Assembly: GCA_002269645.1 (NCBI GenBank)
Contig: NIVC01001113.1
Coordinates: 1 to 64,000 of the forward strand
DNA: 64,000 nt
Source of the DNA: Macrostomum lignano
Taxonomy: Eukaryota
Direction: 5' to 3'
In this document: positions 1 to 48,581 of the stretch, one piece after another
Numbering within the stretch: the stretch's first letter is position 1
Layout of the letters: each line of letters starts with the position of its first letter
Position numbers and translations under genes: made by a program
Notes under the pieces: generated by a model
The model's database searches: none
Told to the model about the DNA's origin: nothing
Seen by the model: only the letters and a program-made list of their open reading frames with translations

Positions 1-346
1 TTTATAAAATATATAATACACTGAAACAAGAAGATACCCTAGGCATAAAACTCCAAAACATAGAGTATCTCCGAGCTAAAGTGTATTATTCTAATGTAGT
101 ACACTCTGCCTGTTCGCTTGTCTTTTCCCTAGTGTTAAAACTTGCGGAGATTATCAGTAGCTTATCTCCGCTACCATGGACAACGGAATTCTTTATTTGT
201 TAACAGCGCATTATAAAATCTAGATATTTAGTTCGAGTTTATCTCCGGGGGAGAAATTAATCTCCGCTCCCTGTATAGATCCATCGCGGCTCACAGGCAG
301 TGAATTGCATGCTAATAACAGACTTACTAAACCTAAACAATTTCAG

Positions 347-3300
347 TGAAAATGACCATGAGCAGCGTATTGAAGTGTCCCAAGCCGGTTCGGTACAAGA
401 CTCCCTGCAAGCACGGCTTCCGCAAAACCATGGAAATTGGCTTTGTCAAAACGCTCAACAAATGCAACCCGATTACTAAAGTTATTAAAAGGAAGTCGTG
501 CGGCTGCGAGAAAAGCCAGTGCTTCGCCAGCCAGGCTATGGAACTCATTCTGGTGATGCAGGCCTCGCAAGATCTTGGCGAGTTGCACTTTGGCTACGAG
601 AAGCAATTCATTATCTCTATGATTCAGAAGATGAAGATCGGCGCCAAGAGCGTCCGCGTCTCCGTTGTCCTGTTCTCTAGCCGTGCCAGCCTGGCTTTCC
701 GTCTGACTGAGTACCACAGCCAATCAAGCGTCATCACCGCTATTAAGGGCCTCAAGCTGATGACTGGCAAGCACCGAGCCATAGGCGATGCCCTCTTATT
801 AGTTCGGGAACAGGTTCTAACCGATTCAGCTGAGCAGAGTGCCAAAATGCTCATCGTCATCACTTCGGGAGATTCTAACTACGGCCGCAGCGTGGAAGTA
901 GAGAGCAACAGACTGCAGGAGATGAGCGTTTCAATCCTGGTGATCGGTGTTGGGGCTGATGTTAATGATGCGTCCCTGCAGGTTATCAGCACCGTATACA
1001 TTCATATTCGCACCTGGATCAAGCTTAAGTACGCATACAAGTACGTACTTCGCATGCGCATCAGCTTCGTAGCCCAGCCAGCCGTCCATGGCGCTCTGAA
1101 GATTCGCTGTCCAAAGTATCGCCGAGTGCTGGTTAGCAAATGCGTTGCTGGCTATAAGAAGCGCATTGTCAAGTTCTACAAGATGGTTCGCAACACCTGC
1201 ATGCCATTCAAGCAGGTGCACAAAGTTCGTTGCACCAATCGTAAGTGATCCGTTGAACTAAATTGGCGTGAAATTTGATTTAAAAGGCTTATTACAGTAC
1301 TGTATAAAACTAAAATATGCTTCTATCGATTACTTCCATATTACACCTACAGCTCCAGTCTGCAAAGAAGGCACAAAGGTTCACATTGGAAAATGCAACC
1401 CTAAAACGCGCCTACGCGTTGTTACGCGAGTGCACACCTCCAAGATTCACGATTGCAGCCACAAAAAGTGCGTCTGGCGATGCAGCAAGCGGCTAGTCCG
1501 AAGGAAGCAGCCCTGTCGAAAGAGTAAGAATGTCGCTTAACTAGGCTAAATGATCAAATTTAATATCAATATTATGCCACTTTCAGAATTGCATCTTTCC
1601 CACACATTGCAGTTCGATGCATCAAGCGCCGGCTTATGATTGAAAAACGTTGCAGAAAATCAGGCTTTCGTAGAATCTTCTGGGGATTCTACAGTACAAC
1701 CCGCGGCAGTTGCAAGCGAGTTCGCATCAAGGTCATTCGAAAAGTTCCGTGCAGTGGCTGCTCCAAGCACCAGATTCGAATCTTTCACATAACTGTTGGG
1801 CGCAAGTGCACTGGAGGTAGTAAAGCGATCTACTCTAGTTTCTACGCCTCACACAAAGGCAGATGCAGCTACCAGAGACTGCATGTTACTAAACGGCGAT
1901 GCGTTTTGAAAAAACGTTGTCCAAGAAAGGCCAGGATCCAAATCGAGACCCAATGTCTCCGTAAAGGAAGCCGTTATCGCGGCGTGTATTGGACGTACTT
2001 AACAAGACTGCAACCTGCCGGTCCATGCGTTCGAGTTCATGGAAAATTAGTTCGACTGATCCCCTGTGGTGGATGCACCACTAAGCAACGTAGCTACCAG
2101 CATGTAACCACGGGAAAAGCCTGCAAAAGCGGCTTCATTACCAGCTTCGTTACTGTCTATCAGGGCGAGGAATCCAGGCGGTGCCACAAAACTCGAGTGG
2201 TTATCCGAAAGCGAAATTGTAAGAAATTTAAGTTAAAAACATGAATGAAACTGTTATTAGAATTTACAGCTTTTTCTCAAAAACAGCCAAACAACTAATA
2301 CAAATCCGTTTAAATATTTTAGGCAAGTCTTGCAAAAAGGATACGACGAAAACAACACCGTGCATTCGAGGATATAGAAGAACCATCCGAATTCACTTCA
2401 CGGTCAAAGGAAGTAAATGTGTGCCTCACAAGACTTTGATAAAGAAAGTCAAGTGTGGTGAGGAAAAACACGGCTGCAAACCACCGCGCAAAGTCCACAC
2501 GCGATGCTCGGCTGGGCACAAGTACTCCTACACCACTACGTATTACTACAAGAAGAAGAAGGTTTGCACCGGTCTGGTTGTTCCGCCAAGTCGCACCTGC
2601 AGCAAGGTTGCCGACCTCGTGTTCGTTCTGGACTCTTCGACCAGCATTCACGACGCCGATTTTGCCAAAGAATCTCGCTTTGTTCAGCACATCGTTCGCA
2701 GGATGGGCGTATCTCCGACTGGCGTTCGCGTTGCTGTTGTCACTTATTCGACCAGACCGAAACTCGTGTTCAACTTGGACAAGTACAAAACCAAGTCGCA
2801 GGTTCTGGCCGCCATGTCGAAGCTTCCACGAGACGAGGGAATCACAATGACTTATGCGGCTATCGACCTTGTCAACAGTGACATCTACCCGAAGAGACGA
2901 GCTGGAGTCCCGTTCATTGTCGTGGTCATCACTGACGGCAAGAGCACGATGGGTGACCCCGTCGCCTCGGCTAAAGTCTTGAAGAAGAAGGGCGCCCGCT
3001 TTGTCTCTGTCGGAATCTACAACCCCGACCCAAGCGTGACCGACAAGATTAATCCGTAAGAATACATTTCTTAAACTGTATTACAGAACATAGGTTACCT
3101 GATTCAAATAAGACATTATAAGCGAAGCATGCTTGCTTTCGAAATCTACTGCTGCAGGGCTGAACTAAAGGGCATCTCAAGCAAAGGAAGATTCTGGCGA
3201 GCCGGAAACTTTAACAAGCTTGATTCCATCGTCAGCAGCGTCGTTCGGGAAGTGTGCACAGGTAGGAGAACGGACACATGCTAGATGCTGGTCTGATGCT

Positions 3301-6300
3301 TAATAACTTGTAATTTACAATTTACAACTTCAGACATGGGAAAATCAAAATCAAAGTCAGGAGGAAAACGGGTGTGCAAGATAATCTGCGTGAAGAAGCG
3401 CAAGATTTCTGCAAAGAAGATTTGCAGGAAGGACTGCTCGAGCAGGACTCTCATCCGTCACTGCAAGAAGCACAGGGCCTATCGCGTGTTTACTCGAGTC
3501 ACCTACCGGTGGAACGGAAAGAAATGCGTTCCCAAGAGCCGGAAGGTCATCAAGAAGATCCGGTGCCGTAAGTAAATGCACTCGTGAAAAACGAGTATAT
3601 TTACCTTTTGCACCTTTGTGCCCCAGGCGTGACTTGCAACGCCATTGGCTCATGTAAGAGAAGCCGTATCTAAATATAGATTTTCGTAACTATGCTTATA
3701 TAGTGATTATTTATTCTGGCCTCGATTGCAGCTCCGAGAACTTGTCCGAAAGCCAAGATCATCCGCAAAGAGTGCAAGCCTGGCAGGGCGAAGAGCGTCA
3801 CGACGCACATCTTCTACACGTCGCGTGTGAAGTGCACGATGTCTCTGCCGCCTCGTTGCACGCAGCACTGCATCAAGAAGGTGAAGCGCTCGGCCGTTCC
3901 GTGCAAGAAAATCAAGTGCAAGGGACAAAGACCACGTGACAAGTGCGGCGGCAGTCGTCGCTATCGTGTTGTCGTCACATCAAGTACATCCAAGTAAAAG
4001 GCGTCTGCAAGAGGCGCAAGACCACCAAGCGCTATCCGTGTCCGGTCAAGTGCCCAAAGACTCAGACCATCATAAGGCCTTGCAAAAAGGGTCGCAAGTT
4101 CTCTGTGAAGTCCATCATCAGCTACACCGTTCGTCGCGCGTGCGTTCACAAGGGCAAGTGCACAGTGAAGTGCGTCAGACGAGTTCTGCGATCGCGAAAG
4201 CGGTGCAAAACGCGTCCGCCAGATCGTCGCTGCAAGCAGCCTCCGCCCTTCTGGACCAAGTGTCGCAAACACTCTGCATACAAGTACCAGATCAAGGCGC
4301 TCTACAGGAATGTTCGCGGAACTTGTGTCATCTACAAGCGAGAGACAATTGCCCGACTTCTTTGCCGTAAGTAGCTCGTTCCTTGACAAGTAGCAAGGGT
4401 AGCTAATCTACTCGTCAAAATAGAAGTTTCAAAACCAGGGTTTATATCTGCTTATTGAATTAATATTTTAGCACCTCGCAAGTGCCCGAAGACGAGAGTA
4501 ACCAAAACGAAGTGCACAAAGGGAGTCAGGCACAAGGTCACCACTACGATTTTCTACTCTGGTAAGATTGTGTGCAGCAAGAAGAAGCCGATCGTATGCC
4601 GACAGGTGTGCACAAAGCGAGTGACCAAGTCTGGTGTCCCGTGCTTTCACATCGTGTGCGACGAGGCCAAGAAGGTCAAGCTTACCAAGTGCGGCGGTAA
4701 GAGGCGCTACCGATCCGTCATCACTACCTGGAATACACGAGTCGGAAAGAAGTGCAGGAAGCACAGGACCGTCAAGCACTATCCGTGCCCAGTGGTTTGC
4801 CCGAAGAGGTCCAAGACCATCAAGCGAACTTCGTGCGGCAAGGGCAGGAAGTACCGGACTCTCACGATCGCGACTTCCACCGTTAAGAAGAGGTGCAGCG
4901 GCCGTATCTGCACACTGCACTGCATCCGCAAGCTGATCCACTCTCGCGTGTTGTGTCCGAAGCCGCCACATCGCTGCAGGAAGCCGCGCAAGGTGCACGT
5001 CCGATGCTCGAAGAAGAACTCACACTCGTACATCATCACCTATTACTACGTGAAGAAGCGAGTGTGTCACCGTAAGTCCCAATGCCTAAAACGTTTTGCA
5101 ACCAATTATTTTAGTTCGCAATGGTTTACAAGCATACCTTACTTTAAACGAATGCACAACTGTTTCTCAGGTGCTTTGAAGTCTGGAAAAGCGCGCCGCT
5201 GCAAGATTGTGTGCGTGAAGAAGCACAAGCGGTCAGCCAGGAAGCCGTGCAAGAAGCGCAAGTGCCGATACCAGCTATCCTACCACACCACCAAGTGTGT
5301 GCACAACTTCCGAACCATCACAACGAAGTACCGCACTCGGGTCCACGGACGCTGTGTCTGGCGACGAAAATCCGTGCGTCGCGTCCGCTGCTCTGGCTGC
5401 TCGTCCCACCAGATTCACTACCACAAGACGACGGTCGGCAGCAAGTGCAAGGCTGGACGCACGCAGACCTTCCTGAACTTCTACGAGTCGCGCAAGTACA
5501 AAACCGGCTGGGTGTGTCACAAGAAGAAAGTCCAGGTGTCCATCATTAAGTGCAAGTGCAACAGGAAGCCTCTGCTGCTCCTGGACAAGAAGTGCCGCAA
5601 GGGCTACAGGAAGCTTACCAAGGTGGTGTTTATCGATCGCGGCGGCAAGTGCATTAGGAAGCAGACTGTCACTAAGAAAAAGTGCAAGATCATCAAAATC
5701 CATTGCGATCCGGCAATGATTGTGAAGAAGTGCACTAAGCACGCGGCTTACCGACTGTTCCTGCAAATCAGCTACAGGCTGGTCGACGGAAAGTGCCGCA
5801 AACACCGCACAAGGATCGTCAAGAAGCAGCCTTGTCGTAAGTATTGATAATCATGCTTTTTAAGTACGCTCTTAAGTAAGTGTTCTAGTTTCCCTAAATG
5901 ATATCTCATTCTTTGATCAAAATGTAAACACAATGCAGCACCAAGACGCTGTCCGAAGGCCAAGACAATCCGCACAAAGTGCAAGCCGGGAGTCGTCAAG
6001 CGAGTCACGACGCACATCTTCTACACGTCGCATGTCAGGTGTACAAAGTCGAAGCGGCCTCGTTGCACGCAGCACTGCATCAAGAAGGTGAAGCGCTCGG
6101 CTGTTCCGTGCAAGAAAATCAAGTGCAAGAAGGACAAGGACCACGTGACAAAGTGCGGCGGCAGTCGTCGCTATCGTGTTGTCGTCACCATCAAGTACAC
6201 CGAAGTAAAAGGCATCTGCAAGAAGCACAAACCACCAAGCGCTATCCGTGTCCGATCAAGTGCCCGAAGACTCAGGTCATCCGTAAACCCTGCTCCAAGG

Positions 6301-9300
6301 GCAAGTCGCACAGCTTGTTCGAGGTCAAGTCCATCATCAGCTACACTGTTCGTCGCTCGTGCGTTCACAAGGGCAAGTGCACCGCAAAGTGCGTCAGACA
6401 CGTGGTTAGCAAGAAAAAGCCTTGCCCACCAGTCCCTACTCCGTGTAAAGTTAAGGCCGTGCTCAAGCGCTGCAAGAAGCACTCCGCCTACAAGTACTTG
6501 ATCGAGGTTTACTACAAGCGAATTCGCGGACGCTGTGTACCGCTGAAGCGTATCACGAAGAAGAGACTCCCATGCCGTAAGTTTAGTCTCTTGTTTTTGC
6601 AAACTATTTGTTATTTCAAACTGTAAGAAATGCAATTGTTCATTCAATTGCTGTTTGATTTATTTAAGCACTTTCACTAAATCTGTAACTTCTAAGTATT
6701 GTACCTGAGACATGTTTTCAGGGTGATGGGTTTCTTGTTCTTTCAGCCTTGTATTTTGTTTTCGATTCTTGAATCCAGAAGATTCAAAGTAATGAGATGA
6801 AACAATAGTTTTCGATTGAGCACTATAAAAAACTCTATTGACGAACGCAAAACTTTGTTTAACATAAGACCCATCTGTATGTGACGAAAAATAATAGAAT
6901 AGTTAATTAAGTTTCAGAAAATTTCTTTTCAAGGAAATCCAACTTATTGCAGAAGTTTTCGAGAGTATCTGAAAATTAATAACTGAAAATTTCGGTTTCG
7001 AGCTTAGGTTAAAACAAGGCAAGGAATGCACGACAGAGTGGACTTTGATAGTATAGTAAATATGATTAATAAATGAAATTATGTTTATGCCTTAGCTTCT
7101 GATCTTTTAAGCCTAGCTACCTTGAAATGCAGGGTAACGTCTGTAGACAACAAGGGCAAAATCGTTTAATAATTAGGCTTGATATTAGAAACGTACTACA
7201 AACCAAAATGCTTCTATCTGACGTCTCAATGGCGCCAATACAGCTTTCAATAAAGTGTACGAACGTTCTTTACTCGTGGCCAGCGAGAGGTGTGTTTTGT
7301 TGCTGCTGTCGTTATTGTTGTACAAACGATCTTTACTGATTACTTTTCTACCAGCATGAAGAGCTAAGAAAATTAGTAACAACCACTTTAGTACTTTCGC
7401 AGCCAGCACTAACTTTTCGAAAACAAAAAATGATATGACCTTACTCATAACTTATAATTTCAGCACCCCGACGGTGCCCGAAGTCGAGGACGACTACCAG
7501 CAACTGCACGAAGGGAGCCAAGCACAAGGTCACCACTACGATTTTCTACTCTGGTAAGATTGTGTGCAGCAAGAAGAAGCCGATCGTATGCCGACAGGTG
7601 TGCACAAAGCGAGTGACCAAGTCTGGTGTCCCGTGCATTCACATCGTGTGCGACGAGGCCAAGAAGGTCAAGCTTACCAAGTGCGGAGGTAAGAGGCGCT
7701 ACCGATCCGTCATCACTACCTGGAATACACGAGTCGGAAAGAAATGCAGGAAGCACAGGACCGTCAAGCACTATCCATGCCCAGTGGTTTGCCCGAAGGG
7801 GTCGAAGACCATCAAGCGAACTTCGTGCGGCAAGGGCAGGAAGTACCGGACTCTCACGATCGCGACTTCCACCGTTAAGAAGAGGTGCAGCGGCCGTATC
7901 TGCACACTGCACTGCATCCGCAAGCTGATCCACTCTCGCGTGTTGTGTCCGAAGCCGCCACATCGCTGCAGGAAGCCACGAAAGGTGCACACGCGATGCT
8001 CGGCTGGGCACAAGTACTCCTACACCACTACGTATTACTACAAGAAGAAGAAGGTTTGCACCGGTCTGGTTGTTCCGCCAAGTCGCACCTGCAGCAAGGT
8101 TGCCGACCTCGTGTTCGTTCTGGACTCTTCGACCAGCATTCACGACGCCGATTTTGCCAAAGAATCTCGCTTTGTTCAGCACATCGTTCGCAGGATGGGC
8201 GTATCTCCGACTGGCGTTCGCGTTGCTGTTGTCACTTATTCGACCAGACCGAAACTCGTGTTCAACTTGGACAAGTACAAAACCAAGTCGCAGGTTCTGG
8301 CCGCCATGTCGAAGCTTCCACGAGACGAGGGAATCACAATGACTTATGCGGCTATCGACCTTGTCAACAGTGACATCTACCCGAAGAGACGAGCTGGAGT
8401 CCCGTTCATTGTCGTGGTCATCACTGACGGCAAGAGCACGATGGGTGACCCCGTCGCCTCGGCTAAAGTCTTGAAGAAGAAGGGCGCCCGCTTTGTCTCT
8501 GTCGGAATCTACAACCCCGACCCAAGCGTGACCGACAAGATTAATCCGTAAGAATACATTTCTTAAACTGTATTACAGAACATAGGTTACCTGATTCAAA
8601 TAAGACATTATAAGCGAAGCATGCTTGCTTTCGAAATCTACTGCTGCAGGGCTGAACTAAAGGGCATCTCAAGCAAAGGAAGATTCTGGCGAGCCGGAAA
8701 CTTTAACAAGCTTGATTCCATCGTCAGCAGCGTCGTTCGGGAAGTGTGCACAGGTAGGAGAACGGACACATGCTAGATGCTGGTCTGATGCTTAATAACT
8801 TGTAATTTACAATTTACAACTTCAGACATGGGAAAATCAAAATCAAAGTCAGGAGGAAAACGGGTGTGCAAGATAATCTGCGTGAAGAAGCGCAAGATTT
8901 CTGCAAAGAAGATTTGCAGGAAGGACTGCTCGAGCAGGACTCTCATCCGTCACTGCAAGAAGCACAGGGCCTATCGCGTGTTTACTCGAGTCACCTACCG
9001 GTGGAACGGAAAGAAATGCGTTCCCAAGAGCCGGAAGGTCATCAAGAAGATCCGGTGCCGTAAGTAAATGCACTCGTGAAAAACGAGTATATTTATGCCT
9101 TTTGCACCTTTGTGCCCCAGACGTGACTTGCAACGCCATTGGCTCATGCTAAGAGAAGCCGTATCTAAATAATAGATGTTTCGTAACTATGCTTATATAG
9201 TGATTATTTATTCTGGCCTCGATTGCAGCTCCGAGAACTTGTCCGAAAGCCAAGATCATCCGCAAAGAGTGCAAGCCTGGCAGGGCGAAGAGCGTCACGA

Positions 9301-12300
9301 CGCACATCTTCTACACGTCGCGTGTGAAGTGCACGATGTCTCTGCCGCCTCGTTGCACGCAGCACTGCATCAAGAAGGTGAAGCGCTCGGCCGTTCCGTG
9401 CAAGAAAATCAAGTGCAAGGGCGACAAAGACCACGTGACCAAGTGCGGCGGCAGTCGTCGCTATCGCGTTGTCGTCACAATCAAGTACATCCAAGTAAAA
9501 GGCGTCTGCAAGAGGCGCAAGACCACCAAGCGCTATCCGTGTCCGGTCAAGTGCCCAAAGACTCAGACCATCATAAGGCCTTGCAAAAAGGGTCGCAAGT
9601 TCTCTGTGAAGTCCATCATCAGCTACACCGTTCGTCGCGCGTGCGTTCACAAGGGCAAGTGCACAGTGAAGTGCGTCAGACGAGTTCTGCGATCGCGAAA
9701 GCGGTGCAAAACGCGTCCGCCAGATCGTCGCTGCAAGCAGCCTCCGCCCTTCTGGACCAAGTGTCGCAAACACTCTGCATACAAGTACCAGATCAAGGCG
9801 CTCTACAGGAATGTTCGCGGAACTTGTGTCATCTACAAGCGAGAGACAATTGCCCGACTTCTTTGCCGTAAGTAGCTCGTTCCTTGACAAGTAGCAAGGG
9901 TAGCTAATCTACTCGTCAAAATAGAAGTTTCAAAACCAGGGTTTATATCTGCTTATTGAATTAATATTTTAGCACCTCGCAAGTGCCCGAAGACGAGAGT
10001 AACCAAAACGAAGTGCACAAAGGGAGTCAGGCACAAGGTCACCACTACGATTTTCTACTCTGGTAAGATTGTGTGCAGCAAGAAGAAGCCGATCGTATGC
10101 CGACAGGTGTGCACAAAGCGAGTGACCAAGTCTGGTGTCCCGTGCTTTCACATCGTGTGCGACGAGGCCAAGAAGGTCAAGCTTACCAAGTGCGGCGGTA
10201 AGAGGCGCTACCGATCCGTCATCACTACCTGGAATACACGAGTCGGAAAGAAGTGCAGGAAGCACAGGACCGTCAAGCACTATCCGTGCCCAGTGGTTTG
10301 CCCGAAGAGGTCCAAGACCATCAAGCGAACTTCGTGCGGCAAGGGCAGGAAGTACCGGACTCTCACGATCGCGACTTCCACCGTTAAGAAGAGGTGCAGC
10401 GGCCGTATCTGCACACTGCACTGCATCCGCAAGCTGATCCACTCTCGCGTGTTGTGTCCGAAGCCGCCACATCGCTGCAGGAAGCCGCGCAAGGTGCACG
10501 TCCGATGCTCGAAGAAGAACTCACACTCGTACATCATCACCTATTACTACGTGAAGAAGCGAGTGTGTCACCGTAAGTCCCAATGCCTAAAACGTTTTGC
10601 AACCAATTATTTTAGTTCGCAATGGTTTACAAGCATACCTTACTTTAAACGAATGCACAACTGTTTCTCAGGTGCTTTGAAGTCTGGAAAAGCGCGCCGC
10701 TGCAAGATTGTGTGCGTGAAGAAGCACAAGCGGTCAGCCAGGAAGCCGTGCAAGAAGCGCAAGTGCCGATACCAGCTATCCTACCACACCACCAAGTGTG
10801 TGCACAACTTCCGAACCATCACAACGAAGTACCGCACTCGGGTCCACGGACGCTGTGTCTGGCGACGAAAATCCGTGCGTCGCGTCCGCTGCTCTGGCTG
10901 CTCGTCCCACCAGATTCACTACCACAAGACGACGGTCGGCAGCAAGTGCAAGGCTGGACGCACGCAGACCTTCCTGAACTTCTACGAGTCGCGCAAGTAC
11001 AAAACCGGCTGGGTGTGTCACAAGAAGAAAGTCCAGGTGTCCATCATTAAGTGCAAGTGCAACAGGAAGCCTCTGCTGCTCCTGGACAAGAAGTGCCGCA
11101 AGGGCTACAGGAAGCTTACCAAGGTGGTGTTTATCGATCGCGGCGGCAAGTGCATTAGGAAGCAGACTGTCACTAAGAAAAAGTGCAAGATCATCAAAAT
11201 CCATTGCGATCCGGCAATGATTGTGAAGAAGTGCACTAAGCACGCGGCTTACCGACTGTTCCTGCAAATCAGCTACAGGCTGGTCGACGGAAAGTGCCGC
11301 AAACACCGCACAAGGATCGTCAAGAAGCAGCCTTGTCGTAAGTATTGATAATCATGCTTTTTAAGTACGCTCTTAAGTAAGTGTTCTAGTTTCCCTAAAT
11401 GATATCTCATTCTTTGATCAAAATGTAAACACAATGCAGCACCAAGACGCTGTCCGAAGGCCAAGACAATCCGCACAAAGTGCAAGCCGGGAGTCGTCAA
11501 GCGAGTCACGACGCACATCTTCTACACGTCGCATGTCAGGTGTACAAAGTCGAAGCGGCCTCGTTGCACGCAGCACTGCATCAAGAAGGTGAAGCGCTCG
11601 GCTGTTCCGTGCAAGAAAATCAAGTGCAAGAAGGACAAGGACCACGTGACAAAGTGCGGCGGCAGTCGTCGCTATCGTGTTGTCGTCACCATCAAGTACA
11701 CCGAAGTAAAAGGCATCTGCAAGAAGCACAAAACCACCAAGCGCTATCCGTGTCCGATCAAGTGCCCGAAGACTCAGGTCATCCGTAAACCCTGCTCCAA
11801 GGGCAAGTCGCACAGCTTGTTCGAGGTCAAGTCCATCATCAGCTACACTGTTCGTCGCTCGTGCGTTCACAAGGGCAAGTGCACCGCAAAGTGCGTCAGA
11901 CACGTGGTTAGCAAGAAAAAGCCTTGCCCACCAGTCCCTACTCCGTGTAAAGTTAAGGCCGTGCTCAAGCGCTGCAAGAAGCACTCCGCCTACAAGTACT
12001 TGATCGAGGTTTACTACAAGCGAATTCGCGGACGCTGTGTACCGCTGAAGCGTATCACGAAGAAGAGACTCCCATGCCGTAAGTTACTTGTATCTACTGT
12101 CTATATAACTAAACCTGCGGTTGTCAGTTAGTCAGGTGGAAGTTCAATGCTTTAAAATAGCTGGATGGATTTTACGGTTTCTGGACTTATGCTGGTGTCT
12201 GATTGAGCGTTAAAGAGTTATTTTCGTCGTGTCATAAAATTTTAAAAAACGTTTGCTTTACGGGAAGAAAAATTGCTTTTTTGCAAGGTCGGATTATAGT

Positions 12301-15300
12301 TGATCGGCTGTGACTGCAGAAAAGCTAGCATCTTCTTAGGTTGCATCAGAGTCAGAACTGAAGGTTTTAATTAATTTTCTTTTTTCACACTGGCAGTGAG
12401 GTGGTGATGGGATTTTCTTTTTCTTATAGGCATCTATAGCTTACACCTTCTGACTGACTGGCTGTGTACAATGCTTATGTGATCAATTGTACGTGCTCTG
12501 GTCCCTCTGACCGACTGGTTTGCGACTTGATATACTAAAACATTGACTGGCTAAATTACTATTCCAATCGAGATCGCATCATCACTCTGCCTTTGCTAGC
12601 TAGGCTCAGTGGGAGTGTTGACCATCATTGAGTGTAAATAGCAGTTCCTTTGTACACGGGAGGGAAACCTTTTTAAGAATTTAGGCTAAGAGAGCCATTG
12701 ATGGTTCGAGACCACCTCGTAGCGGATAATCACTGAAAAATGATTGAACGCCAGTGAAAAGGCGGGGAGGTACCATTATGCGCTGATCCTAGAAATTTAA
12801 TTTCTTTTTTATTGCGTCATTAATTTGTTTTTTACGAGTTTACTAATGCACCTGCCTTAGAACGCTTCGTTAATGCTAAACTAGTTTGCATCAATTGATG
12901 ATAGTGAGCGAGACTGTGAGATGCTCATGTGCAGTATGATATGAATGATCAGGGAATTGTGCTGAGGGGAATAGAGTAAATTATGCTGAGCTCGAATGAT
13001 GCTGAGCGGGAATGATGGTGAGCGGGAATGATGCTGAGCGGGAATGATGGTGAGCGGGAATGATGGTGAGCGGGAATGATGCTGAGCGGGAATGATGCTG
13101 AGCGGGAATGATGGTGAGCGGGAATGATGGTGAGCAGGAATGATGGTGAGCGGGAATGATGGTGAGCGGGAATGATGTGAGCGGAATGATGGTGAGCGGG
13201 AATGATGGTGAGCGGGAATGATGGTGAGCGGGAATGATGTTGAGCAGGAATGATGGTGAGCGGGAATGATGGTGAGCGGGAATGATGGTGAGCGGGAATG
13301 ATGGTGAGCGGGAATGATGGTGAGCGGGAATGATGCTGAGCGGGAATGATGGTGAGCGGGAATGATGCTGAGCGGGAATGATGGTGAGCGGGAATGATGG
13401 TGAGCGGGAATGATGGTGAGCGGGAATGATGCTGAGCGGGAATGATGGTGAGCGGGAATGATGGTGAGCGGGAATGATGGTGAGCGGGAATGATGCTGAG
13501 CGGGAATGATGGTGAGCGGGAATGATGGTGAGCGGGAATGATGGTGAGCGGGAATGATGGTGAGCGGGAATGATGGTGAGCGGGAATGATGGTGAGCGGG
13601 AATGATGGTGAGCGGGAATGATGGTGAGCGGGAATGATGGTGAGCGGGAATGATGGTGAGCGGGAATGATGGTGAGCGGGAATGATGGTGAGCGGGAATG
13701 ATGGTGAGCGGGAATGATGCTGAGCGGGAATGATGGTGAGCGGGAATGATGGTGAGCGGGAATGATGGTGAGCGGGAATGATGGTGAGCGGGAATGATGG
13801 TGAGCGGGAATGATGGTGAGCGGGAATGATGGTGAGCGGGAATGATGCTGAGCGGGAATGATGGTGAGCGGGAATGATGCTGAGCGGGAATGATGCTGAG
13901 TTGCTCTATGGGATTTCATTACCAAGTGCATATTACTTACTTATACATTGTTGAGTAGGGATGCTGAATGCTCTTTTAATGGTTGGGATTTCACTGCTTA
14001 AAATTCGACTCTTTGGATTTCCACCAAGTGGGATTCTACTGAGGAGATTCCCCTGAGAAATTTGACTAAGGGAAGGGATTCCATTCAAGGGATTCCACTG
14101 GGGATTCCACTGGAGATTTCACAGACCTGGGATTTTACTTTGCCGGTACATCGTAGCTCGATCGCTTTATTTTAAATGGTTTGTGCAGTAAGAGAATTTT
14201 TTGCTCTTATTCCTGTGCGATTGTGGCGCTTCTGATAAAAACTTATAAGATAAAAAAGCCTAAAAAACTTGTTTAATTCGAAGCTTTTTAGGTTCTCTGG
14301 GGGAATCAGCTTTTTCAGGCACTAGCTGTCAAGCCTATGTTGAAATTTTCAGTAGCAACCACTCCTAAGAAATGGTGAAGTTGTTTAAATTATTGTTTCA
14401 GACAAACTGGTTCACTCTATTTGTCTTGCTGTAAAAACTCTGATTAAAAGTTTATACTGGTCGACGGAAGCGCACTTTTAGCTCTTTATTTGCCACTGGT
14501 TGAGAAACTTCGGATTATGACATTAGGAACGAAGCTTTTTCTTAAGCAGTAGACTCAGTTAAAGAAAGAGTAGCTGATGTGAAATTTCGGAAAAGTATTT
14601 TAAACAGTTAGAATCGTTTCGGCCAATCATTTGGCACAACTGTTATAAATGGAAGCTACATATCAAAGTTTGTAACAACAATCTTAAGTCAAATCTCCAT
14701 CACACCGTCAAAATTTCATTGCATCGATATTTACCCTGACGAAAGCCCAACACATGGTTTTGAAAGGTCAGTTATTGCATTTTCGACCTTGTAAAGCAGC
14801 CCCATAAATGCTTAATATGTCAATGCAACAAAAAGTAAAATTTTCCTGTTTTTCGTACAGTTTCTCTCAGCAGGACACAAGGAATATTACACGTGCCTGC
14901 AAAATTCACATTCTACAGTAGTACGTGCAAACAACACAAGAAATTAGTTCGATAACAACAGCATTCTAATCAAATAAATCAGCATATCGCTTATGTTAAA
15001 AATTTCTAATTTCAGCACCCCGACGGTGCCCGAAGTCGAGGACGACTACCAGCAACTGTACAAAGGGAGCAAAGCACAAAGTCACAACCAAAGTTTTCTA
15101 CATTGGCAAGATCATCTGCCACAAAAGAAGTCCGAAAGTTTGTCACCAGCATTGCATCAAGCGAGTGACCAAGTCTGCTGTTCCTTGCGTTCACATCGTG
15201 TGCGACGAGGCCAAGAAGGTCAGTGTTACCAAGTGCGGCGGTAAGAGGCGCTACCGATCCGTCATCACTACCTGGAATACACGAGTCGGAAAGAAGTGCA

Positions 15301-18300
15301 GGAAGCACAGGACCGTCAAGCACTATCCATGCCCAGTGGTTTGCCCAAAGGGGTCGAAGACCATCAAGCGAACTTCGTGCGGCAAGGGCAGGAAGTACCG
15401 GACTCTCACGATCGCGACTTCCACCGTTAAGAAGAGGTGCAGCGGCCGTATCTGCACACTGCACTGCATCCGCAAGCTGATCCACTCTCGCGTGTTGTGT
15501 CCGAAGCCGCCACATCGCTGCAGGAGGCCACGCAAAGTGCGCGTTCGATGCTCAGCCGGACACATGTACTCCTACATCATCACCTATTACTACCAGCGAA
15601 AGCATTTGTGTCTAGGTAAAAGTTTTTTTTAATGTTTTAATATGATTAAAGCTTTACTAGACAATTTACTATTTTTACGACAATTAACCTAAAAAACACA
15701 ATTACTTCGTTCAAGGCAAATCATCAAAAGGTAAAGCGCATTGCAAAACAATCTGCGTGAAGAAGCGCAAGATTTCTGCAAAGAAGATTTGCAGGAAGGA
15801 CTGCTCGAGCAGGACTCTCATCCGTCACTGCAAGAAGCACAGGGCCTATCGCGTGTTTACTCGAGTCACCTACCGGTGGAACGGAAAGAAATGCGTTCCC
15901 AAGAGCCGGAAGGTCATCAAGAAGATCCGGTGCCGTAAGTAAATGCACTCGTGAAAAACGAGTATATTAATACCTTTTGCACCTTTGTGCCCCAGGCGTG
16001 ACTTGCAACGCCATTGGCGCATGTTAAGAGAAGCCGAATCCAAATATTAGATTATTCGTAACTATGCTAAGTGATTATTCGCTTTCGCCTTGATTGCAGC
16101 TCCGAGAACTTGTCCGAAAGCCAAGATCATCCGCAAAGAGTGCAAGCCTGGCAGGGCGAAGAGCGTCACGACGCACATCTTCTACACGTCGCGTGTGAAG
16201 TGCACGATGTCTCTGCCGCCTCGTTGCACGCAGCACTGCATCAAGAAGGTGAAGCGCTCGGCCGTTCCGTGCAAGAAAATCAAGTGCAAGGGCGACAAAG
16301 ACCACGTGACCAAGTGCGGCGGCAGTCGTCGCTATCGCGTTGTCGTCACAATCAAGTACATCCAAGTAAAAGGCGTCTGCAAGAGGCGCAAGACCACCAA
16401 GCGCTATCCGTGTCCGGTCAAGTGCCCAAAGACTCAGACCATCATAAGGCCTTGCAAAAAGGGTCGCAAGTTCTCTGTGAAGTCCATCATCAGCTACACC
16501 GTTCGTCGCGCGTGCGTTCACAAGGGCAAGTGCACAGTGAAGTGCGTCAGACGAGTTCTGCGATCGCGAAAGCGGTGCAAAACGCGTCCGCCAGATCGTC
16601 GCTGCAAGCAGCCTCCGCCCTTCTGGACCAAGTGTCGCAAACACTCTGCATACAAGTACCAGATCAAGGCGCTCTACAGGAATGTTCGCGGAACTTGTGT
16701 CATCTACAAGCGAGAGACAATTGCCCGACTTCTTTGCCGTAAGTAGCTCGTTCCTTGACAAGTAGCAAGGGTAGCTAATCTACTCGTCAAAATAGAAGTT
16801 TCAAAACCAGGGTTTATATCTGCTTATTGAATTAATATTTTAGCACCTCGCAAGTGCCCGAAGACGAGAGTAACCAAAACGAAGTGCACAAAGGGAGTCA
16901 GGCACAAGGTCACCACTACGATTTTCTACTCTGGTAAGATTGTGTGCAGCAAGAAGAAGCCGATCGTATGCCGACAGGTGTGCACAAAGCGAGTGACCAA
17001 GTCTGGTGTCCCGTGCTTTCACATCGTGTGCGACGAGGCCAAGAAGGTCAAGCTTACCAAGTGCGGCGGTAAGAGGCGCTACCGATCCGTCATCACTACC
17101 TGGAATACACGAGTCGGAAAGAAGTGCAGGAAGCACAGGACCGTCAAGCACTATCCGTGCCCAGTGGTTTGCCCGAAGAGGTCCAAGACCATCAAGCGAA
17201 CTTCGTGCGGCAAGGGCAGGAAGTACCGGACTCTCACGATCGCGACTTCCACCGTTAAGAAGAGGTGCAGCGGCCGTATCTGCACACTGCACTGCATCCG
17301 CAAGCTGATCCACTCTCGCGTGTTGTGTCCGAAGCCGCCACATCGCTGCAGGAAGCCGCGCAAGGTGCACGTCCGATGCTCGAAGAAGAACTCACACTCG
17401 TACATCATCACCTATTACTACGTGAAGAAGCGAGTGTGTCACCGTAAGTCCCAATGCCTAAAACGTTTTGCAACCAATTATTTTAGTTCGCAATGGTTTA
17501 CAAGCATACCTTACTTTAAACGAATGCACAACTGTTTCTCAGGTGCTTTGAAGTCTGGAAAAGCGCGCCGCTGCAAGATTGTGTGCGTGAAGAAGCACAA
17601 GCGGTCAGCCAGGAAGCCGTGCAAGAAGCGCAAGTGCCGATACCAGCTATCCTACCACACCACCAAGTGTGTGCACAACTTCCGAACCATCACAACGAAG
17701 TACCGCACTCGGGTCCACGGACGCTGTGTCTGGCGACGAAAATCCGTGCGTCGCGTCCGCTGCTCTGGCTGCTCGTCCCACCAGATTCACTACCACAAGA
17801 CGACGGTCGGCAGCAAGTGCAAGGCTGGACGCACGCAGACCTTCCTGAACTTCTACGAGTCGCGCAAGTACAAAACCGGCTGGGTGTGTCACAAGAAGAA
17901 AGTCCAGGTGTCCATCATTAAGTGCAAGTGCAACAGGAAGCCTCTGCTGCTCCTGGACAAGAAGTGCCGCAAGGGCTACAGGAAGCTTACCAAGGTGGTG
18001 TTTATCGATCGCGGCGGCAAGTGCATTAGGAAGCAGACTGTCACTAAGAAAAAGTGCAAGATCATCAAAATCCATTGCGATCCGGCAATGATTGTGAAGA
18101 AGTGCACTAAGCACGCGGCTTACCGACTGTTCCTGCAAATCAGCTACAGGCTGGTCGACGGAAAGTGCCGCAAACACCGCACAAGGATCGTCAAGAAGCA
18201 GCCTTGTCGTAAGTATTGATAATCATGCTTTTTAAGTACGCTCTTAAGTAAGTGTTCTAGTTTCCCTAAATGATATCTCATTCTTTGATCAAAATGTAAA

Positions 18301-30300: not shown

Positions 30301-33300
30301 TGTCCGGTCAAGTGCCCAAAGACTCAGACCATCATAAGGCCTTGCAAAAAGGGTCGCAAGTTCTCTGTGAAGTCCATCATCAGCTACACCGTTCGTCGCG
30401 CGTGCGTTCACAAGGGCAAGTGCACAGTGAAGTGCGTCAGACGAGTTCTGCGATCGCGAAAGCGGTGCAAAACGCGTCCGCCAGATCGTCGCTGCAAGCA
30501 GCCTCCGCCCTTCTGGACCAAGTGTCGCAAACACTCTGCATACAAGTACCAGATCAAGGCGCTCTACAGGAATGTTCGCGGAACTTGTGTCATCTACAAG
30601 CGAGAGACAATTGCCCGACTTCTTTGCCGTAAGTAGCTCGTTCCTTGACAAGTAGCAAGGGTAGCTAATCTACTCGTCAAAATAGAAGTTTCAAAACCAG
30701 GGTTTATATCTGCTTATTGAATTAATATTTTAGCACCTCGCAAGTGCCCGAAGACGAGAGTAACCAAAACGAAGTGCACAAAGGGAGTCAGGCACAAGGT
30801 CACCACTACGATTTTCTACTCTGGTAAGATTGTGTGCAGCAAGAAGAAGCCGATCGTATGCCGACAGGTGTGCACAAAGCGAGTGACCAAGTCTGGTGTC
30901 CCGTGCTTTCACATCGTGTGCGACGAGGCCAAGAAGGTCAAGCTTACCAAGTGCGGCGGTAAGAGGCGCTACCGATCCGTCATCACTACCTGGAATACAC
31001 GAGTCGGAAAGAAGTGCAGGAAGCACAGGACCGTCAAGCACTATCCGTGCCCAGTGGTTTGCCCGAAGAGGTCCAAGACCATCAAGCGAACTTCGTGCGG
31101 CAAGGGCAGGAAGTACCGGACTCTCACGATCGCGACTTCCACCGTTAAGAAGAGGTGCAGCGGCCGTATCTGCACACTGCACTGCATCCGCAAGCTGATC
31201 CACTCTCGCGTGTTGTGTCCGAAGCCGCCACATCGCTGCAGGAAGCCGCGCAAGGTGCACGTCCGATGCTCGAAGAAGAACTCACACTCGTACATCATCA
31301 CCTATTACTACGTGAAGAAGCGAGTGTGTCACCGTAAGTCCCAATGCCTAAAACGTTTTGCAACCAATTATTTTAGTTCGCAATGGTTTACAAGCATACC
31401 TTACTTTAAACGAATGCACAACTGTTTCTCAGGTGCTTTGAAGTCTGGAAAAGCGCGCCGCTGCAAGATTGTGTGCGTGAAGAAGCACAAGCGGTCAGCC
31501 AGGAAGCCGTGCAAGAAGCGCAAGTGCCGATACCAGCTATCCTACCACACCACCAAGTGTGTGCACAACTTCCGAACCATCACAACGAAGTACCGCACTC
31601 GGGTCCACGGACGCTGTGTCTGGCGACGAAAATCCGTGCGTCGCGTCCGCTGCTCTGGCTGCTCGTCCCACCAGATTCACTACCACAAGACGACGGTCGG
31701 CAGCAAGTGCAAGGCTGGACGCACGCAGACCTTCCTGAACTTCTACGAGTCGCGCAAGTACAAAACCGGCTGGGTGTGTCACAAGAAGAAAGTCCAGGTG
31801 TCCATCATTAAGTGCAAGTGCAACAGGAAGCCTCTGCTGCTCCTGGACAAGAAGTGCCGCAAGGGCTACAGGAAGCTTACCAAGGTGGTGTTTATCGATC
31901 GCGGCGGCAAGTGCATTAGGAAGCAGACTGTCACCAAGAAAAAGTGTCCTCCTGTTAAATGCTTTAACAAGAAAGTCCTTCGCAAGTGTAGGAAGCACTC
32001 TGCGTATCAATACGTTGTTAGGGTTTATTACCGGGCAGTTCGTGGTCGCTGTGTGTCCTATAAGTCCAAGATAACCAAGAAGCTTCCTTGTCGTAAGTAC
32101 ATTTTATAAACGTTTACTTTTTGTTAGTTGTTTACTTGTTTGTTAAAAGCCATACATAATTTGGCCTTTTTTTCAGCCCCGGTTCCTTGTCCAAAGTCGA
32201 AGAAGATTGTGAGGGGGTGCAGGAAAGGTGTGATAAATCGGGTAACGACGACTGTTTTCTACGTGGCTAAGATATCTTGCAGCAAGGGTCGTCGCCCTGT
32301 ATGCCGGCAAAAGTGCATCCGACGTGTAACACGTGCTGCTGTTCCATGTGGTGTCCCGCGTCGCTGTATGAAAAAGAAGATTAAACATGTTAGTAAGTGC
32401 GGCGGAAAAAGGCGCTACCGGTCTATTACAACAATATGGTTTTCTGGCAGATACCCGAAATGTAGAAAGCACAAGATTGTTAAACACGTTCCGTGTCCTG
32501 TTGACTGCAAGAAGCCAAAGGTCGTCAAGATCTCATGCGTTGGTTCTAGAGAATTCCGTGAAAAGCGCACGACCACATATTCTGTGAAGAAATCATGCCG
32601 CAAGTCAATCTGCGTTCTCCGCTGCGTTAGGCATGTAGTTGTTTCCCGCGTGCCTTGCGTCGCTCCAGTCGTTTGCCGTCCTCGCAGAAGAGTTTTGCCG
32701 TGCTCGAAGCGTTCGGCCTATAGGAAAATAATTGAGATATTGTCAAAGTTCAAGAAAGGCGAATGCCGAGTTTACCGCAAGCGTATTGTGAAGAAAATCC
32801 CTTGTCGTAAGTTTAGCTAGAAATTCTATTTTAACTTGTTTCGATTTTGCGATTTTTCTACCAAAATATATTCTTTTTATGAAATTTTGTTTCAGCCTGC
32901 AAACGCGGTCGAACTGTCATCCAGAAGACTTGTCGCAAAGGTTTCCGCAAAGTCATCAAGACCGTTTACATTCGCGTCCGTGGAGTTTGCCGTGCTAAGA
33001 GCGTCGTGCTCCGTCGCATCCGGTGCCCGGAGCCGCCTCGATGCAGTCGTAGCTATTACGTTGTCTCCACTTGCTTCCATGGAGTGCGTCGACTGTTGTT
33101 TGTATCGAGCAGGCGGGTCAAGTCAGCAACCGGGCGGTTCACGTGCATCACCAAGTCAACAGCTGTTGCGTATTTCGACTGCCTTCCAGGTTAGCTATGA
33201 CTATCTAGATGCCAGTGAAACATGTTTTTGTGCTACTTGTTTATAAATATTTGACTATTTTTAAGCTAAAAATTCATTATTTTCAGATTGCCGTCACGGC

Positions 33301-42496: not shown

Positions 42497-42895
<399 letters not shown>

Positions 42896-48503: not shown

Positions 48504-48581
48504 TAGTTCACGTTGTTCTCAATCCCATTCCACTATACATGTAGTTTTTATCTAATGTGACTAAGCCAGGTGCTTTTAGTG

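What the first reader, a model, noticed from the sequence alone, without database searches (positions are those of the whole stretch)
4472..5071. Candidate new ~40-55 aa cationic beta-hairpin Cys module with two alternating subtypes
Seen: the non-vWA sequence parses into modules of roughly C-x(7-9)-C-xx-[GH]-xx-[YF][RK]-strand-G-x-C-strand-PC, e.g. CGGKRRYRSVITTWNTRVGKKCRKHRTVKHYPC and CKKHSAYKYLIEVYYKRIRGRCVPLKRITKKRLPC. A longer subtype has two extra Cys in the turn (CSKKKPIVCRQVC). Exons G, H, J, K and L each hold long-short-long-short modules. Inference: alternating hydrophobic/basic beta-branched residues suggest disulfide-stapled amphipathic beta-sheets, loosely like Trp-less TSP1 repeats or beta-hairpin antimicrobial peptides. 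Released fragments could be antimicrobial.
Basis: partly seen in the sequence, partly recalled or inferred. Interest (0 to 1): 0.7.

Follow-up and report, generated by a model that had tools for sequence, protein, structure and literature searches.

The report
New cationic cysteine module, flatworm matrix protein
This exon of a giant secreted protein of the flatworm Macrostomum lignano encodes four copies of a small, very basic, cysteine-framed beta-sheet module that matches no described protein domain and is found only in Macrostomum; it probably makes a stiff, positively charged scaffold that binds negatively charged material.

Summary
Window 4472-5071 is a 600-nt, phase 1-1 exon of a giant + strand gene of Macrostomum lignano (GenBank PAA94323.1, an uncharacterised 'VWFA domain-containing protein' with a signal peptide). 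It encodes long-short-long-short modules. The short type is C-x8-11-C-x18-23-C-x10-12-C. The long type has two extra Cys at the hairpin tip. The fourth module is completed by the first Cys of the next exon.

At least 102 modules lie on the + strand of 1-33300 and none on the - strand. All Cys are invariant among paralogous exons (37-44% identity) and in an orthologue from another species (62% identity, 19/19 Cys, dN/dS 0.26).

AlphaFold2 predicts a short strand plus a long beta-hairpin (pLDDT 88.8). Pfam, PDB sequences, Foldseek against the PDB, and profile comparison with TSP1 and pleiotrophin/midkine domains all gave nothing. A profile search of 1.84 billion proteins found only Macrostomum sequences.

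So this is a real, lineage-restricted, undescribed disulfide-rich domain family. The 'Trp-less TSP1' and 'antimicrobial fragments' readings are unsupported. The most likely role, by inference only, is a polycationic, disulfide-stiffened, polyanion-binding scaffold in a secreted matrix or adhesive-type protein. Its vWA domains resemble collagen VI and mussel PTMP1. Moderate interest.

The parts
4472..5071 (+). Exon D (the finding): 600 nt, phase 1-1, 199 full codons, four modules in the order long-short-long-short
   Evidence: Splice sites, frame and translation. The same splicing appears in public gene models P0001 and P0006.
4483..4644 (+). Module 1, long type (6 Cys): CPKTRVTKTKCTKGVRHKVTTTIFYSGKIVCSKKKPIVCRQVCTKRVTKSGVPC
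   Evidence: Regex and coordinates. AF2 strands 8-11, 20-34 and 42-56, block pLDDT 81-91.
4657..4788 (+). Module 2, short type (4 Cys): CDEAKKVKLTKCGGKRRYRSVITTWNTRVGKKCRKHRTVKHYPC
   Evidence: AF2 single-module model has pLDDT 88.8 and pTM 0.62, with strands 9-12, 21-32 and 35-46.
4798..4956 (+). Module 3, long type (6 Cys): CPKRSKTIKRTSCGKGRKYRTLTIATSTVKKRCSGRICTLHCIRKLIHSRVLC
4975..5071 (+). Module 4, short type, first three Cys: CRKPRKVHVRCSKKNSHSYIITYYYVKKRVCH. The module is split by the intron 5072-5170.
5171..5202 (+). Start of exon E. It supplies the last strand and fourth Cys of module 4 (R-ALKSGKARRC), giving C-x9-C-x19-C-x11-C across the splice junction.
5171..5836 (+). Exon E (666 nt, phase 1-1): variant short modules, including C-x15-C-x22-C-x11-C
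9973..10572 (+). Identical copy of exon D (600/600). Further identical copies lie at 16844-17443, 24212-24811 and 30734-31333.
9229..9867 (+). Paralogous 4-module exon C (639 nt). Copies at 16100-16738, 23468-24106 and 29990-30628. The copy at 3732-4366 is frameshifted.
11440..12078 (+). Paralogous 4-module exon F (639 nt). Copies at 18311-18949 and 25679-26317. The copy at 5939-6576 has a 1-base deletion.
15016..15615 (+). Paralogous 4-module exon A2 (600 nt, 82% aa identity to D). Copies at 22384-22983 and 28905-29504.
7464..8547 (+). Exon AV: four D-like modules fused in frame to a vWA domain with an intact MIDAS motif (DSSTS...T...D)
   Evidence: Pfam VWA E=3e-31, sequence, PDB relatives.
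32177..32806 (+). [not shown]
33287..33606 (+). Last exon: one more module, a Lys-rich tail and the stop codon TAA at 33604-33606. This is the 3' end of the gene.
2287..3055 (+). Exon with two short modules followed by a vWA domain. Another vWA exon lies at about 346-1240.
   Evidence: Pfam VWA E=1.7e-31 and 1.9e-29.

Best explanation
Exon 4472-5071 encodes four copies of a Macrostomum-restricted, previously undescribed extracellular domain. The domain is a 42-55 residue, strongly basic module built on four invariant Cys (six in the long subtype). It is predicted to fold as one short strand plus a long two-stranded beta-hairpin held by disulfides.

More than a hundred such modules, encoded by symmetric phase-1 exons that have been tandemly amplified very recently, are strung together with collagen-VI/PTMP1-like vWA domains. 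Together they form a giant secreted protein of M. lignano (PAA94323.1 / A0A267H7R9).

The most likely mode of action is structural. The disulfide-stiffened modules would form an extended polycationic rod, with about 30% K+R and about 1-2% D+E. The rod would bind polyanionic partners electrostatically, such as sulfated or sialylated glycans of mucus or glycocalyx, or other secreted material. The MIDAS-bearing vWA domains would provide metal-dependent protein-protein (collagen-type) attachment. This would make it a cohesive or adhesive matrix component.

Shown: gene structure, module architecture, conservation, purifying selection, predicted fold, charge, signal peptide, vWA identity, taxonomic restriction.

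Inferred: disulfide bonding and its connectivity, polyanion binding, a matrix or adhesive role, and the tissue of expression (unknown).
For: - Coding exon with canonical phase-1 splice sites, spliced the same way in public models that carry a signal peptide.
- Module counts are far above chance and strand-specific.
- All Cys are invariant across paralogous exons at 37-44% identity, with dN/dS 0.39-0.61 between paralogues.
- The orthologous locus L001 from another species has the same exon order. Its exons are 67-78% nt identical and its introns cannot be aligned. Exon D is 62% aa identical with 19/19 Cys kept and dN/dS 0.26.
- AF2 gives pLDDT 79.3 for four modules and 88.8 (pTM 0.62) for one module, with the same strand pattern in every module.
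- Short and long subtypes are homologous (hhalign probability 87-91%).
- There is no Pfam, PDB-sequence or Foldseek-PDB match.
- A profile search of 1.84 billion representatives gave only 4 hits: three from M. lignano and one Logan-assembly sequence without organism label, taken to be a related species.
- Charge: 60 K+R against 2 D+E in the exon. Over all modules K is 16.5%, R 13.3%, C 9.9%, D+E 1.8%.
- The vWA domains pass Pfam at E~1e-30. The repeated one keeps the MIDAS motif and is closest to collagen VI alpha3, mussel proximal thread matrix protein 1 and collagen-binding integrin I domains.
- In the same animal, a polycationic region of the adhesive protein Mlig-ap1 acts by charge and is blocked by heparin (PMC6410801). 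This shows that such a mechanism is used in this species, though by an unrelated sequence.
Against: - There are no expression, localisation or biochemical data for this gene. No paper mentions it.
- The AF2 alignments contain only paralogues from one genome, so confidence may be inflated.
- Disulfide connectivity could not be read from the model output.
- Foldseek is weak on 50-residue domains, so 'no known fold' is not proven, and no AlphaFold DB search was possible.
- The polyanion-binding and matrix role rests on composition and domain company only.
- Two exon copies in the window carry frameshifts, so part of the array could be decaying or misassembled.
Confidence: 0.6

Rival explanations
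1. The module is not a new fold. It is an extremely diverged member of the TSR / pleiotrophin-midkine group of three-stranded, disulfide-stapled, heparin-binding beta-sheet domains, too far diverged for sequence methods to detect.
For: - The short module's Cys spacing (C-x8-11-C-x18-23-C-x10-12-C) is almost that of the pleiotrophin/midkine C-domain (C-x9-C-x21-C-x9-C, read from PDB 2n6f, 2luu and 2lut).
- Both are about 43 aa, basic and three-stranded.
- Midkine-b (2luu) appears among the Foldseek hits of the 4-module model with the highest identity in the list (18%), but only at rank 24, E=3.2, TM 0.16-0.22.
- By spacing, the long module could have a C1-C5, C2-C6, C3-C4 topology like group-1 TSRs (inference).
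- TSRs also occur in phase-1 exons and alongside vWA domains (general knowledge).
Against: - No module hits Pfam TSP_1 or PTN_MK even at E<=10.
- The module profile against PDB sequences finds only chance Rab35 fragments.
- hhalign of the short and long profiles against PTN/MK C, PTN/MK N and TSP-1 TSR alignments gives probability 0.1-1.9%.
- The single-module Foldseek top 50 contains no TSR, midkine or pleiotrophin chain.
- There is no WxxW or CSxTCG motif, and W makes up 0.5% of residues.
Confidence: 0.2
2. The protein is a polyprotein precursor. Proteases cut it between modules and release cationic, disulfide-stapled beta-hairpin peptides that act as antimicrobials in mucus.
For: The modules are very cationic, Cys-stapled and beta-hairpin-rich. 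K/R residues are present everywhere and could serve as tryptic or furin-like sites. The protein is secreted (signal peptide).
Against: - Inter-module linkers are 1-8 residues (PVV, FHIV, PKPPHR, SG, K) with no conserved dibasic sites, acidic spacers or propeptides.
- One module is split across an intron and others abut vWA domains directly.
- The vWA domains and the tandem array point to a structural protein.
- K/R richness inside the strands would make any tryptic processing destroy the modules themselves.
- There is no similarity to known antimicrobial peptide families.
Confidence: 0.07
3. The pattern is a by-product of a low-complexity, recently amplified repeat (or of assembly collapse or expansion) in a decaying or non-functional gene, with no folded domain behind it.
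For: Super-repeat units are 99.2-100% identical, introns included. Two exon copies carry frameshifting deletions. The composition is heavily biased.
Against: - Diverged paralogous exons (37-44% identity) and a cross-species orthologue keep every Cys, with dN/dS 0.2-0.6 while dS is about 1.2.
- Shuffles of the same composition almost never give the pattern.
- AF2 confidence is high.
- The frameshifting deletions are absent from the GenBank assembly of the same locus (L004), so they look like assembly errors.
Confidence: 0.03

Closest known systems
Pleiotrophin/midkine C-terminal domain (Pfam PTN_MK_C; PDB 2n6f, 1mkc, 2luu)
   Same: About 43 residues with four Cys at nearly the same spacing (C-x9-C-x21-C-x9-C against C-x8-11-C-x18-23-C-x10-12-C). 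A three-stranded antiparallel sheet, strongly basic, and a known heparin/glycosaminoglycan binder. It is the best analogy for how the module may work.
   Different: No sequence or profile similarity (Pfam none, hhalign probability 0.3%). It is not recovered by single-module Foldseek. PTN/MK are small two-domain cytokines, not tandem arrays of more than 100 modules. They have no long 6-Cys subtype of this form and do not occur with vWA domains.
Thrombospondin type-1 repeat (TSR, Pfam TSP_1)
   Same: An elongated, disulfide-stapled, three-stranded module of about 55 aa with six Cys (compare the long subtype). It has a basic strand, phase-1 exon modules and tandem arrays in secreted matrix proteins, sometimes together with vWA domains.
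   Different: No WxxW layer and almost no Trp. No CSxTCG motif, and different Cys spacing (9,19,7,3,10 against roughly 3,10,11,9,4). No Pfam hit, hhalign probability 0.1-0.3%, and no TSR among the Foldseek hits.
KR-rich regions of the flatworm adhesive protein Mlig-ap1 (M. lignano; PMC6410801)
   Same: Same species. Part of a giant secreted protein, with extreme positive charge. Function depends on charge interactions and is blocked by heparin.
   Different: Mlig-ap1 KR regions are low-complexity G/R/K sequence without a Cys framework. Mlig-ap1 and Mlig-ap2 carry vWD/C8/TIL/EGF/TSP-1/C-lectin domains rather than vWA. The present gene is a different, uncharacterised locus.
Mussel proximal thread matrix protein 1 (PTMP1) and collagen VI vWA domains
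   Same: The vWA domains of this protein are most similar to them among solved structures (E=2.8e-23 for PTMP1, 1.2e-94 summed over collagen VI alpha3). They are secreted structural, collagen-binding matrix proteins.
   Different: They lack any cationic Cys-module array. The similarity concerns the vWA parts only, not the finding itself.
Cationic beta-hairpin antimicrobial peptides (tachyplesin, protegrin, arenicin)
   Same: Cationic, disulfide-stapled antiparallel hairpins.
   Different: These are 17-25 residues with two strands, released from small dedicated precursors. Here the modules have 42-55 residues and three strands, are covalently arrayed in a giant vWA protein, and have no processing sites.

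Membership tests
TSP1 repeat (Pfam PF00090) | Significant match to the family profile | tested here: not met
   No TSP_1 hit for the exon or for any of 23 modules even at E<=10. hhalign against three TSP-1 TSRs gives probability 0.1-0.3%.
TSP1 repeat (Pfam PF00090) | WxxW(xxW) tryptophan ladder and CSxTCG motif | tested here: not met
   Neither motif is present in the 31-module alignment, and W is 0.5% of residues.
TSP1 repeat (Pfam PF00090) | Three-stranded elongated fold with C1-C5, C2-C6, C3-C4 disulfides | tested here: inconclusive
   AF2 predicts three strands, but coordinates and connectivity were not available. No TSR structure appears in the Foldseek top 50.
Pleiotrophin/midkine C-domain (Pfam PTN_MK_C) | Significant match to the family profile | tested here: not met
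   No Pfam hit. The PDB sequence profile search does not find 2n6f, 1mkc or 2luu. hhalign probability is 0.3-0.4%.
Pleiotrophin/midkine C-domain (Pfam PTN_MK_C) | Four Cys spaced C-x9-C-x21-C-x9-C in a basic domain of about 43 aa | tested here: met
   Short modules have C-x8-11-C-x18-23-C-x10-12-C in 42-50 aa with about 30% K+R. The reference spacing was read from PDB chains. This is a resemblance only and is not sufficient for membership.
Pleiotrophin/midkine C-domain (Pfam PTN_MK_C) | Structural superposition on the three-stranded MK/PTN fold | tested here: inconclusive
   Midkine-b appears only at rank 24 (E=3.2, TM 0.16-0.22) for the 4-module model and is absent from the single-module top 50. 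Foldseek has little power on domains this small.
von Willebrand factor type A domain (Pfam PF00092), neighbouring domains of the same protein | Profile match above the gathering threshold, and MIDAS motif DxSxS...T...D | tested here: met
   VWA scores 103-110 bits against a cut-off of 23.8. The repeated vWA has DSSTS, T and D. The vWA at 346-1240 has lost the motif (MQASQD).
Flatworm adhesion proteins Mlig-ap1 / Mlig-ap2 | Domain set vWD-C8-TIL plus C-lectin/EGF (ap1), or vWD/TIL/LDL/TSP-1 with 221/255-aa repeats (ap2) | tested here: not met
   The gene has vWA domains and the new Cys modules only. None of these domains were found by Pfam. Descriptions are from PMC6410801 and PMC8621496.
New Macrostomum cationic Cys module (proposed family) | Four invariant Cys at 8-16/17-24/9-13 spacing; consensus K-G-x-x-[YF]-[RK] after C2; G-x-C at the hairpin turn; P-C at the end; an optional C...C-x3-C insertion | tested here: met
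   Holds in 35 unique module sequences (about 95 regex-matched instances) in the window and in the orthologue L001.

The most novel reading that the evidence does not exclude
The module is a fold family that arose within Macrostomum (or macrostomorph flatworms). The giant polycationic protein it builds would be a so far unrecognised functional component of flatworm secretions. It could be, for example, a third charge-based cohesive/adhesive, coacervating glue, rhabdite or egg-cement scaffold, or a mucus scaffold with intrinsic antimicrobial activity. It would work through rigid arrays of heparin-binding-like beta-sheets rather than through disordered KR-rich sequence.
Probability: 0.15. Interest if true: 0.65.

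Novelty: new variant of a known kind. Interest (0 to 1): 0.45.

Why it matters
Small disulfide-rich extracellular repeats are a familiar kind of building block. This one belongs to no catalogued family and is confined to one flatworm genus. It has been amplified to more than 100 copies in a single secreted protein, with super-repeats still 99-100% identical, so domain birth and expansion can be seen in progress.

M. lignano is the main laboratory model for reversible bioadhesion. In that system, charge-based binding of a polycationic protein is already known to be essential. A second, structurally ordered polycationic protein would therefore be a natural candidate for adhesion, mucus, eggshell or cement biology, and for biomimetic polyanion-binding materials.

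For databases, the result defines a new domain family that could be deposited. It would remove the 'hypothetical protein' status of most of this gene's length.

Tried and rejected
- Bacterial-style ORF listing was uninformative, because the region is eukaryotic with introns of about 100 bp.
- The repeat finder at window scale was swamped by a 16-bp minisatellite.
- The search for homologous proteins with the exon gave no hit. The full HMMER profile search was needed.
- Foldseek on the 4-module model and on the single module gave only generic beta-sheet fragments such as GFP, CRBP, lysenin, phage coat proteins, small heat-shock proteins and the AMPK beta subunit, all at E>=0.3. These were rejected as meaningless.
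- A weak Pfam TBP hit (E=0.05, below the cut-off) and the ELAPOR1_C, zf-C2H2 and Ig_5 single-module hits were rejected as chance. The same applies to the Rab35 'YRTITSTYYRG' fragment match.
- The hypothesis that the gene is Mlig-ap1 or Mlig-ap2 was rejected on domain content.
- Literature searches for the locus tag, for the SRA run and for vWA, cysteine-rich, rhabdite or cement-gland proteins in Macrostomum found nothing about this gene.
- TSR and PTN/MK homology was tested by hhalign and not supported.
- The third Foldseek job (viral library) and the two remaining word-index protein searches were not used, because they could not add to the exhaustive HMMER scan.
Full report
**1. What is at the coordinates**

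The window is eukaryotic. Window 4472-5071 is a single exon on the + strand, bounded by ...ttttag|CACCTC and GTCACC|gtaagt. It is 600 nt long and both flanking introns are in phase 1. Its 199 complete codons read PRKCPKTRVTKTKC...YYYVKKRVCH.

**2. Organism and gene**

A profile of five paralogous 4-module exons (alignment A1) was scanned with HMMER against 1.84 billion representative proteins. It found four proteins. Three are Macrostomum lignano gene models. One of these is PAA94323.1, BOX15_Mlig000187g2, 'hypothetical protein' (UniRef A0A267H7R9, 'VWFA domain-containing protein'). The fourth is a 249-aa ORF from Logan assemblies of SRR31628392, SRR31628403 and SRR31628435.

The M. lignano models splice exon D exactly as predicted here. 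They begin with a signal peptide (MPSTATKCSRAVLLLALCIAVAVAA...) followed by an acidic stretch and a first vWA domain. The GenBank locus (NIVC01000012.1, L004) is about 99% identical to the window but has a different number of repeat units. No paper in the library mentions the locus.

The gene is not one of the characterised adhesion proteins Mlig-ap1 or Mlig-ap2. Those carry vWD/C8/TIL/EGF/C-lectin/TSP-1 domains and low-complexity KR regions (PMC6410801, PMC8621496, PMC9229212, PMC6745481).

**3. Check of the observation**

The fourth Cys of its last module is the first Cys of the next exon (...RVCH|R-ALKSGKARRC, window 5200-5202), so that module spans the intron.

A strict regular expression finds 63 short and 39 long modules on the + strand of 1-33300 and none on the - strand. 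In 1530 aa of unique exons, 17 short and 10 long modules are observed. Residue shuffles give means of 0.72 and 0.003.

In a 31-module alignment (A3) only the four Cys are invariant. The strands are not strictly amphipathic.

Composition over all modules is K 16.5%, R 13.3%, C 9.9%, V 9.8%, T 9.1% and D+E 1.8%. The exon has 60 K+R against 2 D+E and pI 10.7.

**4. Evidence that it is a real, constrained protein domain**

Paralogous 4-module exons are only 37-44% identical to exon D (82% for A2), yet they keep every Cys. Between paralogues, dN/dS is 0.39-0.61.

The Logan contig L001 carries exons in the same order (B-like, C-like, D-like). Exon identity is 67-78% at the nucleotide level and the introns cannot be aligned, so it comes from a different species. 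Its D orthologue is 62% identical in protein, keeps 19/19 Cys, and gives dS about 1.2 and dN/dS 0.26. Exons B and C behave alike, with dN/dS 0.17-0.37.

The short and long subtypes are homologous by profile-profile comparison (hhalign probability 87-91%, P about 1e-6). The two extra Cys always occur together. By spacing, the long type is the short type with an insertion C-x4-7-C at the hairpin tip. This suggests a local tip disulfide added to the two core disulfides (inference).

**5. Predicted structure**

AlphaFold2 on exon D, using the 5-exon alignment, gave mean pLDDT 79.3. The pTM of 0.38 is as expected for beads on a string. Every module showed the same pattern: a 3-4 residue strand followed by a 12-16 + 12-16 residue hairpin.

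A single short module (window 4648-4797) with the 31-module alignment gave pLDDT 88.8 and pTM 0.62, with strands at 9-12, 21-32 and 35-46. There are two caveats. The alignments contain paralogues only, and the tool does not return coordinates, so the disulfide connectivity could not be read.

**6. Comparison with known families**

- Pfam gave no hit for the exon or for 23 individual modules, apart from sub-threshold noise.
- PDB sequences gave nothing for the exon. For the module profile they gave only chance Rab35 fragments.
- Foldseek against the PDB gave nothing below E=0.3 for either model. The hits are generic sheet fragments of unrelated proteins, and no TSR chain is in either top 50.
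- Midkine-b (2luu) appeared at rank 24 (E=3.2) for the 4-module model. This led to a comparison with the pleiotrophin/midkine C-domain. Its Cys spacing, C-x9-C-x21-C-x9-C (read from PDB chains), is strikingly close to that of the short module, and it is likewise a basic three-stranded heparin-binding sheet.
- However, hhalign of the short and long profiles against PTN/MK C-domain, PTN/MK N-domain and TSP-1 TSR alignments gave probabilities of 0.1-1.9%. Midkine and pleiotrophin are also absent from the single-module Foldseek list.

**7. Context and likely function**

The repeated vWA domain keeps an intact MIDAS motif (DSSTS...T...D). Among solved structures it is closest to collagen VI alpha3 vWA domains, mussel proximal thread matrix protein 1 and the collagen-binding I domains of integrins alpha1 and alpha2. 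All of these are extracellular matrix or collagen-binding modules.

Four features fit a secreted structural protein: a signal peptide, more than 100 Cys-framed modules, a net charge of about +0.3 per residue, and matrix-type vWA domains. In such a protein, disulfide-stiffened cationic modules would form an extended polyvalent binder of polyanions (glycans of mucus or glycocalyx, or other secreted polymers), while the vWA domains would dock to proteins.

The same species already uses charge-based binding by a polycationic protein for reversible adhesion, and heparin abolishes it (PMC6410801). This makes such a mechanism plausible. It says nothing directly about this gene, whose tissue of expression is unknown.

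The linkers are 1-8 residues without conserved cleavage spacers. One module is split by an intron. Others abut vWA domains directly.

**8. Evolutionary dynamics**

The block A2-B'-C-D-E-F (4.7 kb plus the minisatellite) recurs at 15000, 22368 and 28889 with 99.6-100% identity, introns included. Partial units at 3375-6583 and 8867-12829 are 99.2-99.4% identical. All five copies of exon D are 600/600 identical.

Within a unit, by contrast, the 4-module exons are old paralogues with dS of 0.3 to saturation. The array therefore grew in at least two phases: an ancient exon duplication that produced the C/F and D/A2 types, and a very recent amplification or homogenisation of the whole block. Symmetric phase-1 exons make such growth frame-neutral.

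**9. Verdict**

The claim of a 'new module' stands at the level of every test available here. Of the functional suggestions, the beta-hairpin and disulfide character is supported by prediction. The TSP1 link is not supported, and the antimicrobial idea is untested speculation.

The finding is a lineage-restricted new family of a familiar kind, a small disulfide-rich extracellular repeat. It lies in an uncharacterised giant secreted protein of a laboratory model for bioadhesion. Interest is moderate (0.45). It would rise if expression or RNAi tied the protein to adhesion, mucus or egg cement, or if a solved structure showed a truly new fold.

Noticed in passing
window 15000-19700, 22368-27068, 28889-31946; also 3375-6583 and 8867-12829: A multi-exon super-repeat (exons A2-B'-C-D-E-F with their introns) is repeated at 99.2-100% nucleotide identity, and the five copies of exon D are 600/600 identical. 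This points to very recent tandem amplification or gene conversion, or to an assembly effect. The GenBank assembly of the same locus (L004, NIVC01000012.1) has a different unit arrangement.
   Followed up: partly
window 12979-13900, 19850-21267, 27218-27789: A 16-bp minisatellite (AATGATGGTGAGCGGG; 58, 89 and 36 copies, 95-96% matches) fills the long intron between exons F and A2 of each super-repeat. Its copy number differs between units. It causes the strong GC-skew peaks in the composition profile.
   Followed up: partly
window 3923-3978 and 6228: The first copies of exon C (3732-4366) and exon F (5939-6576) carry small deletions (2+1+1 bases, and 1 base) that break the reading frame. The other copies in the window and the GenBank assembly are intact at these sites. 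The deletions are probably uncorrected long-read indels, or less likely a decaying unit.
   Followed up: yes
window 7464-8547: A hybrid exon: four D/A2-like modules run directly, with no intron, into the vWA domain that elsewhere (2287-3055) follows two different modules. This looks like an unequal recombination product between repeat units.
   Followed up: partly
window 346-1240 versus 2287-3055 and 8053-8547: The repeated vWA domain keeps a complete MIDAS motif (DSSTS, T, D). The vWA at 346-1240 has lost it (MQASQD), so it is a metal-independent variant. The closest solved relatives are collagen VI alpha3, mussel PTMP1 and integrin alpha1/alpha2 I domains.
   Followed up: partly
window 33287-33606: The last exon of the gene holds one more Cys module followed by a Lys-rich tail (KVKKPKKVVKVVKPKKVIKHKKVIKHKKKKNRR) and then the stop codon.
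   Followed up: partly
window 35692-36282 (- strand), probably extending to about 38167: The neighbouring gene on the opposite strand has an exon matching Major Facilitator Superfamily / sugar-transporter profiles (MFS_1 E=8e-9, Sugar_tr E=1e-8).
   Followed up: partly
window 41022-41897, 42497-42895, 48271-49510, 53340-54632: Simple repeats fill the gene-poor right half of the window: a 12-bp satellite (AAATGGGTGTCC, 74 copies), a perfect (TGTC)100, and purine-rich GA/GAGAGGA arrays at 48.3-49.5 kb mirrored by pyrimidine-rich TC arrays at 53.3-54.6 kb. The last two have opposite strand composition and flank a region of about 4 kb.
   Followed up: no
window 45099-45392 (+) and 51800-52189 (-): A PHD-finger-like ORF lies at 45099-45392 (PHD E=2e-4, below the cut-off). 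An ORF at 51800-52189 contains a '...HHDNVLAHKS...' stretch that resembles mariner-type transposase by eye, but it has no Pfam hit. Both may be remnants of mobile elements.
   Followed up: no
L001 (Logan SRR31628392 contig, 1958 bp), also L002 and L003: An orthologous fragment from an unidentified related species keeps the exon order B-C-D, the phase-1 borders and every Cys, while its introns are unalignable. The species behind these sequencing runs could not be identified with the tools available.
   Followed up: partly
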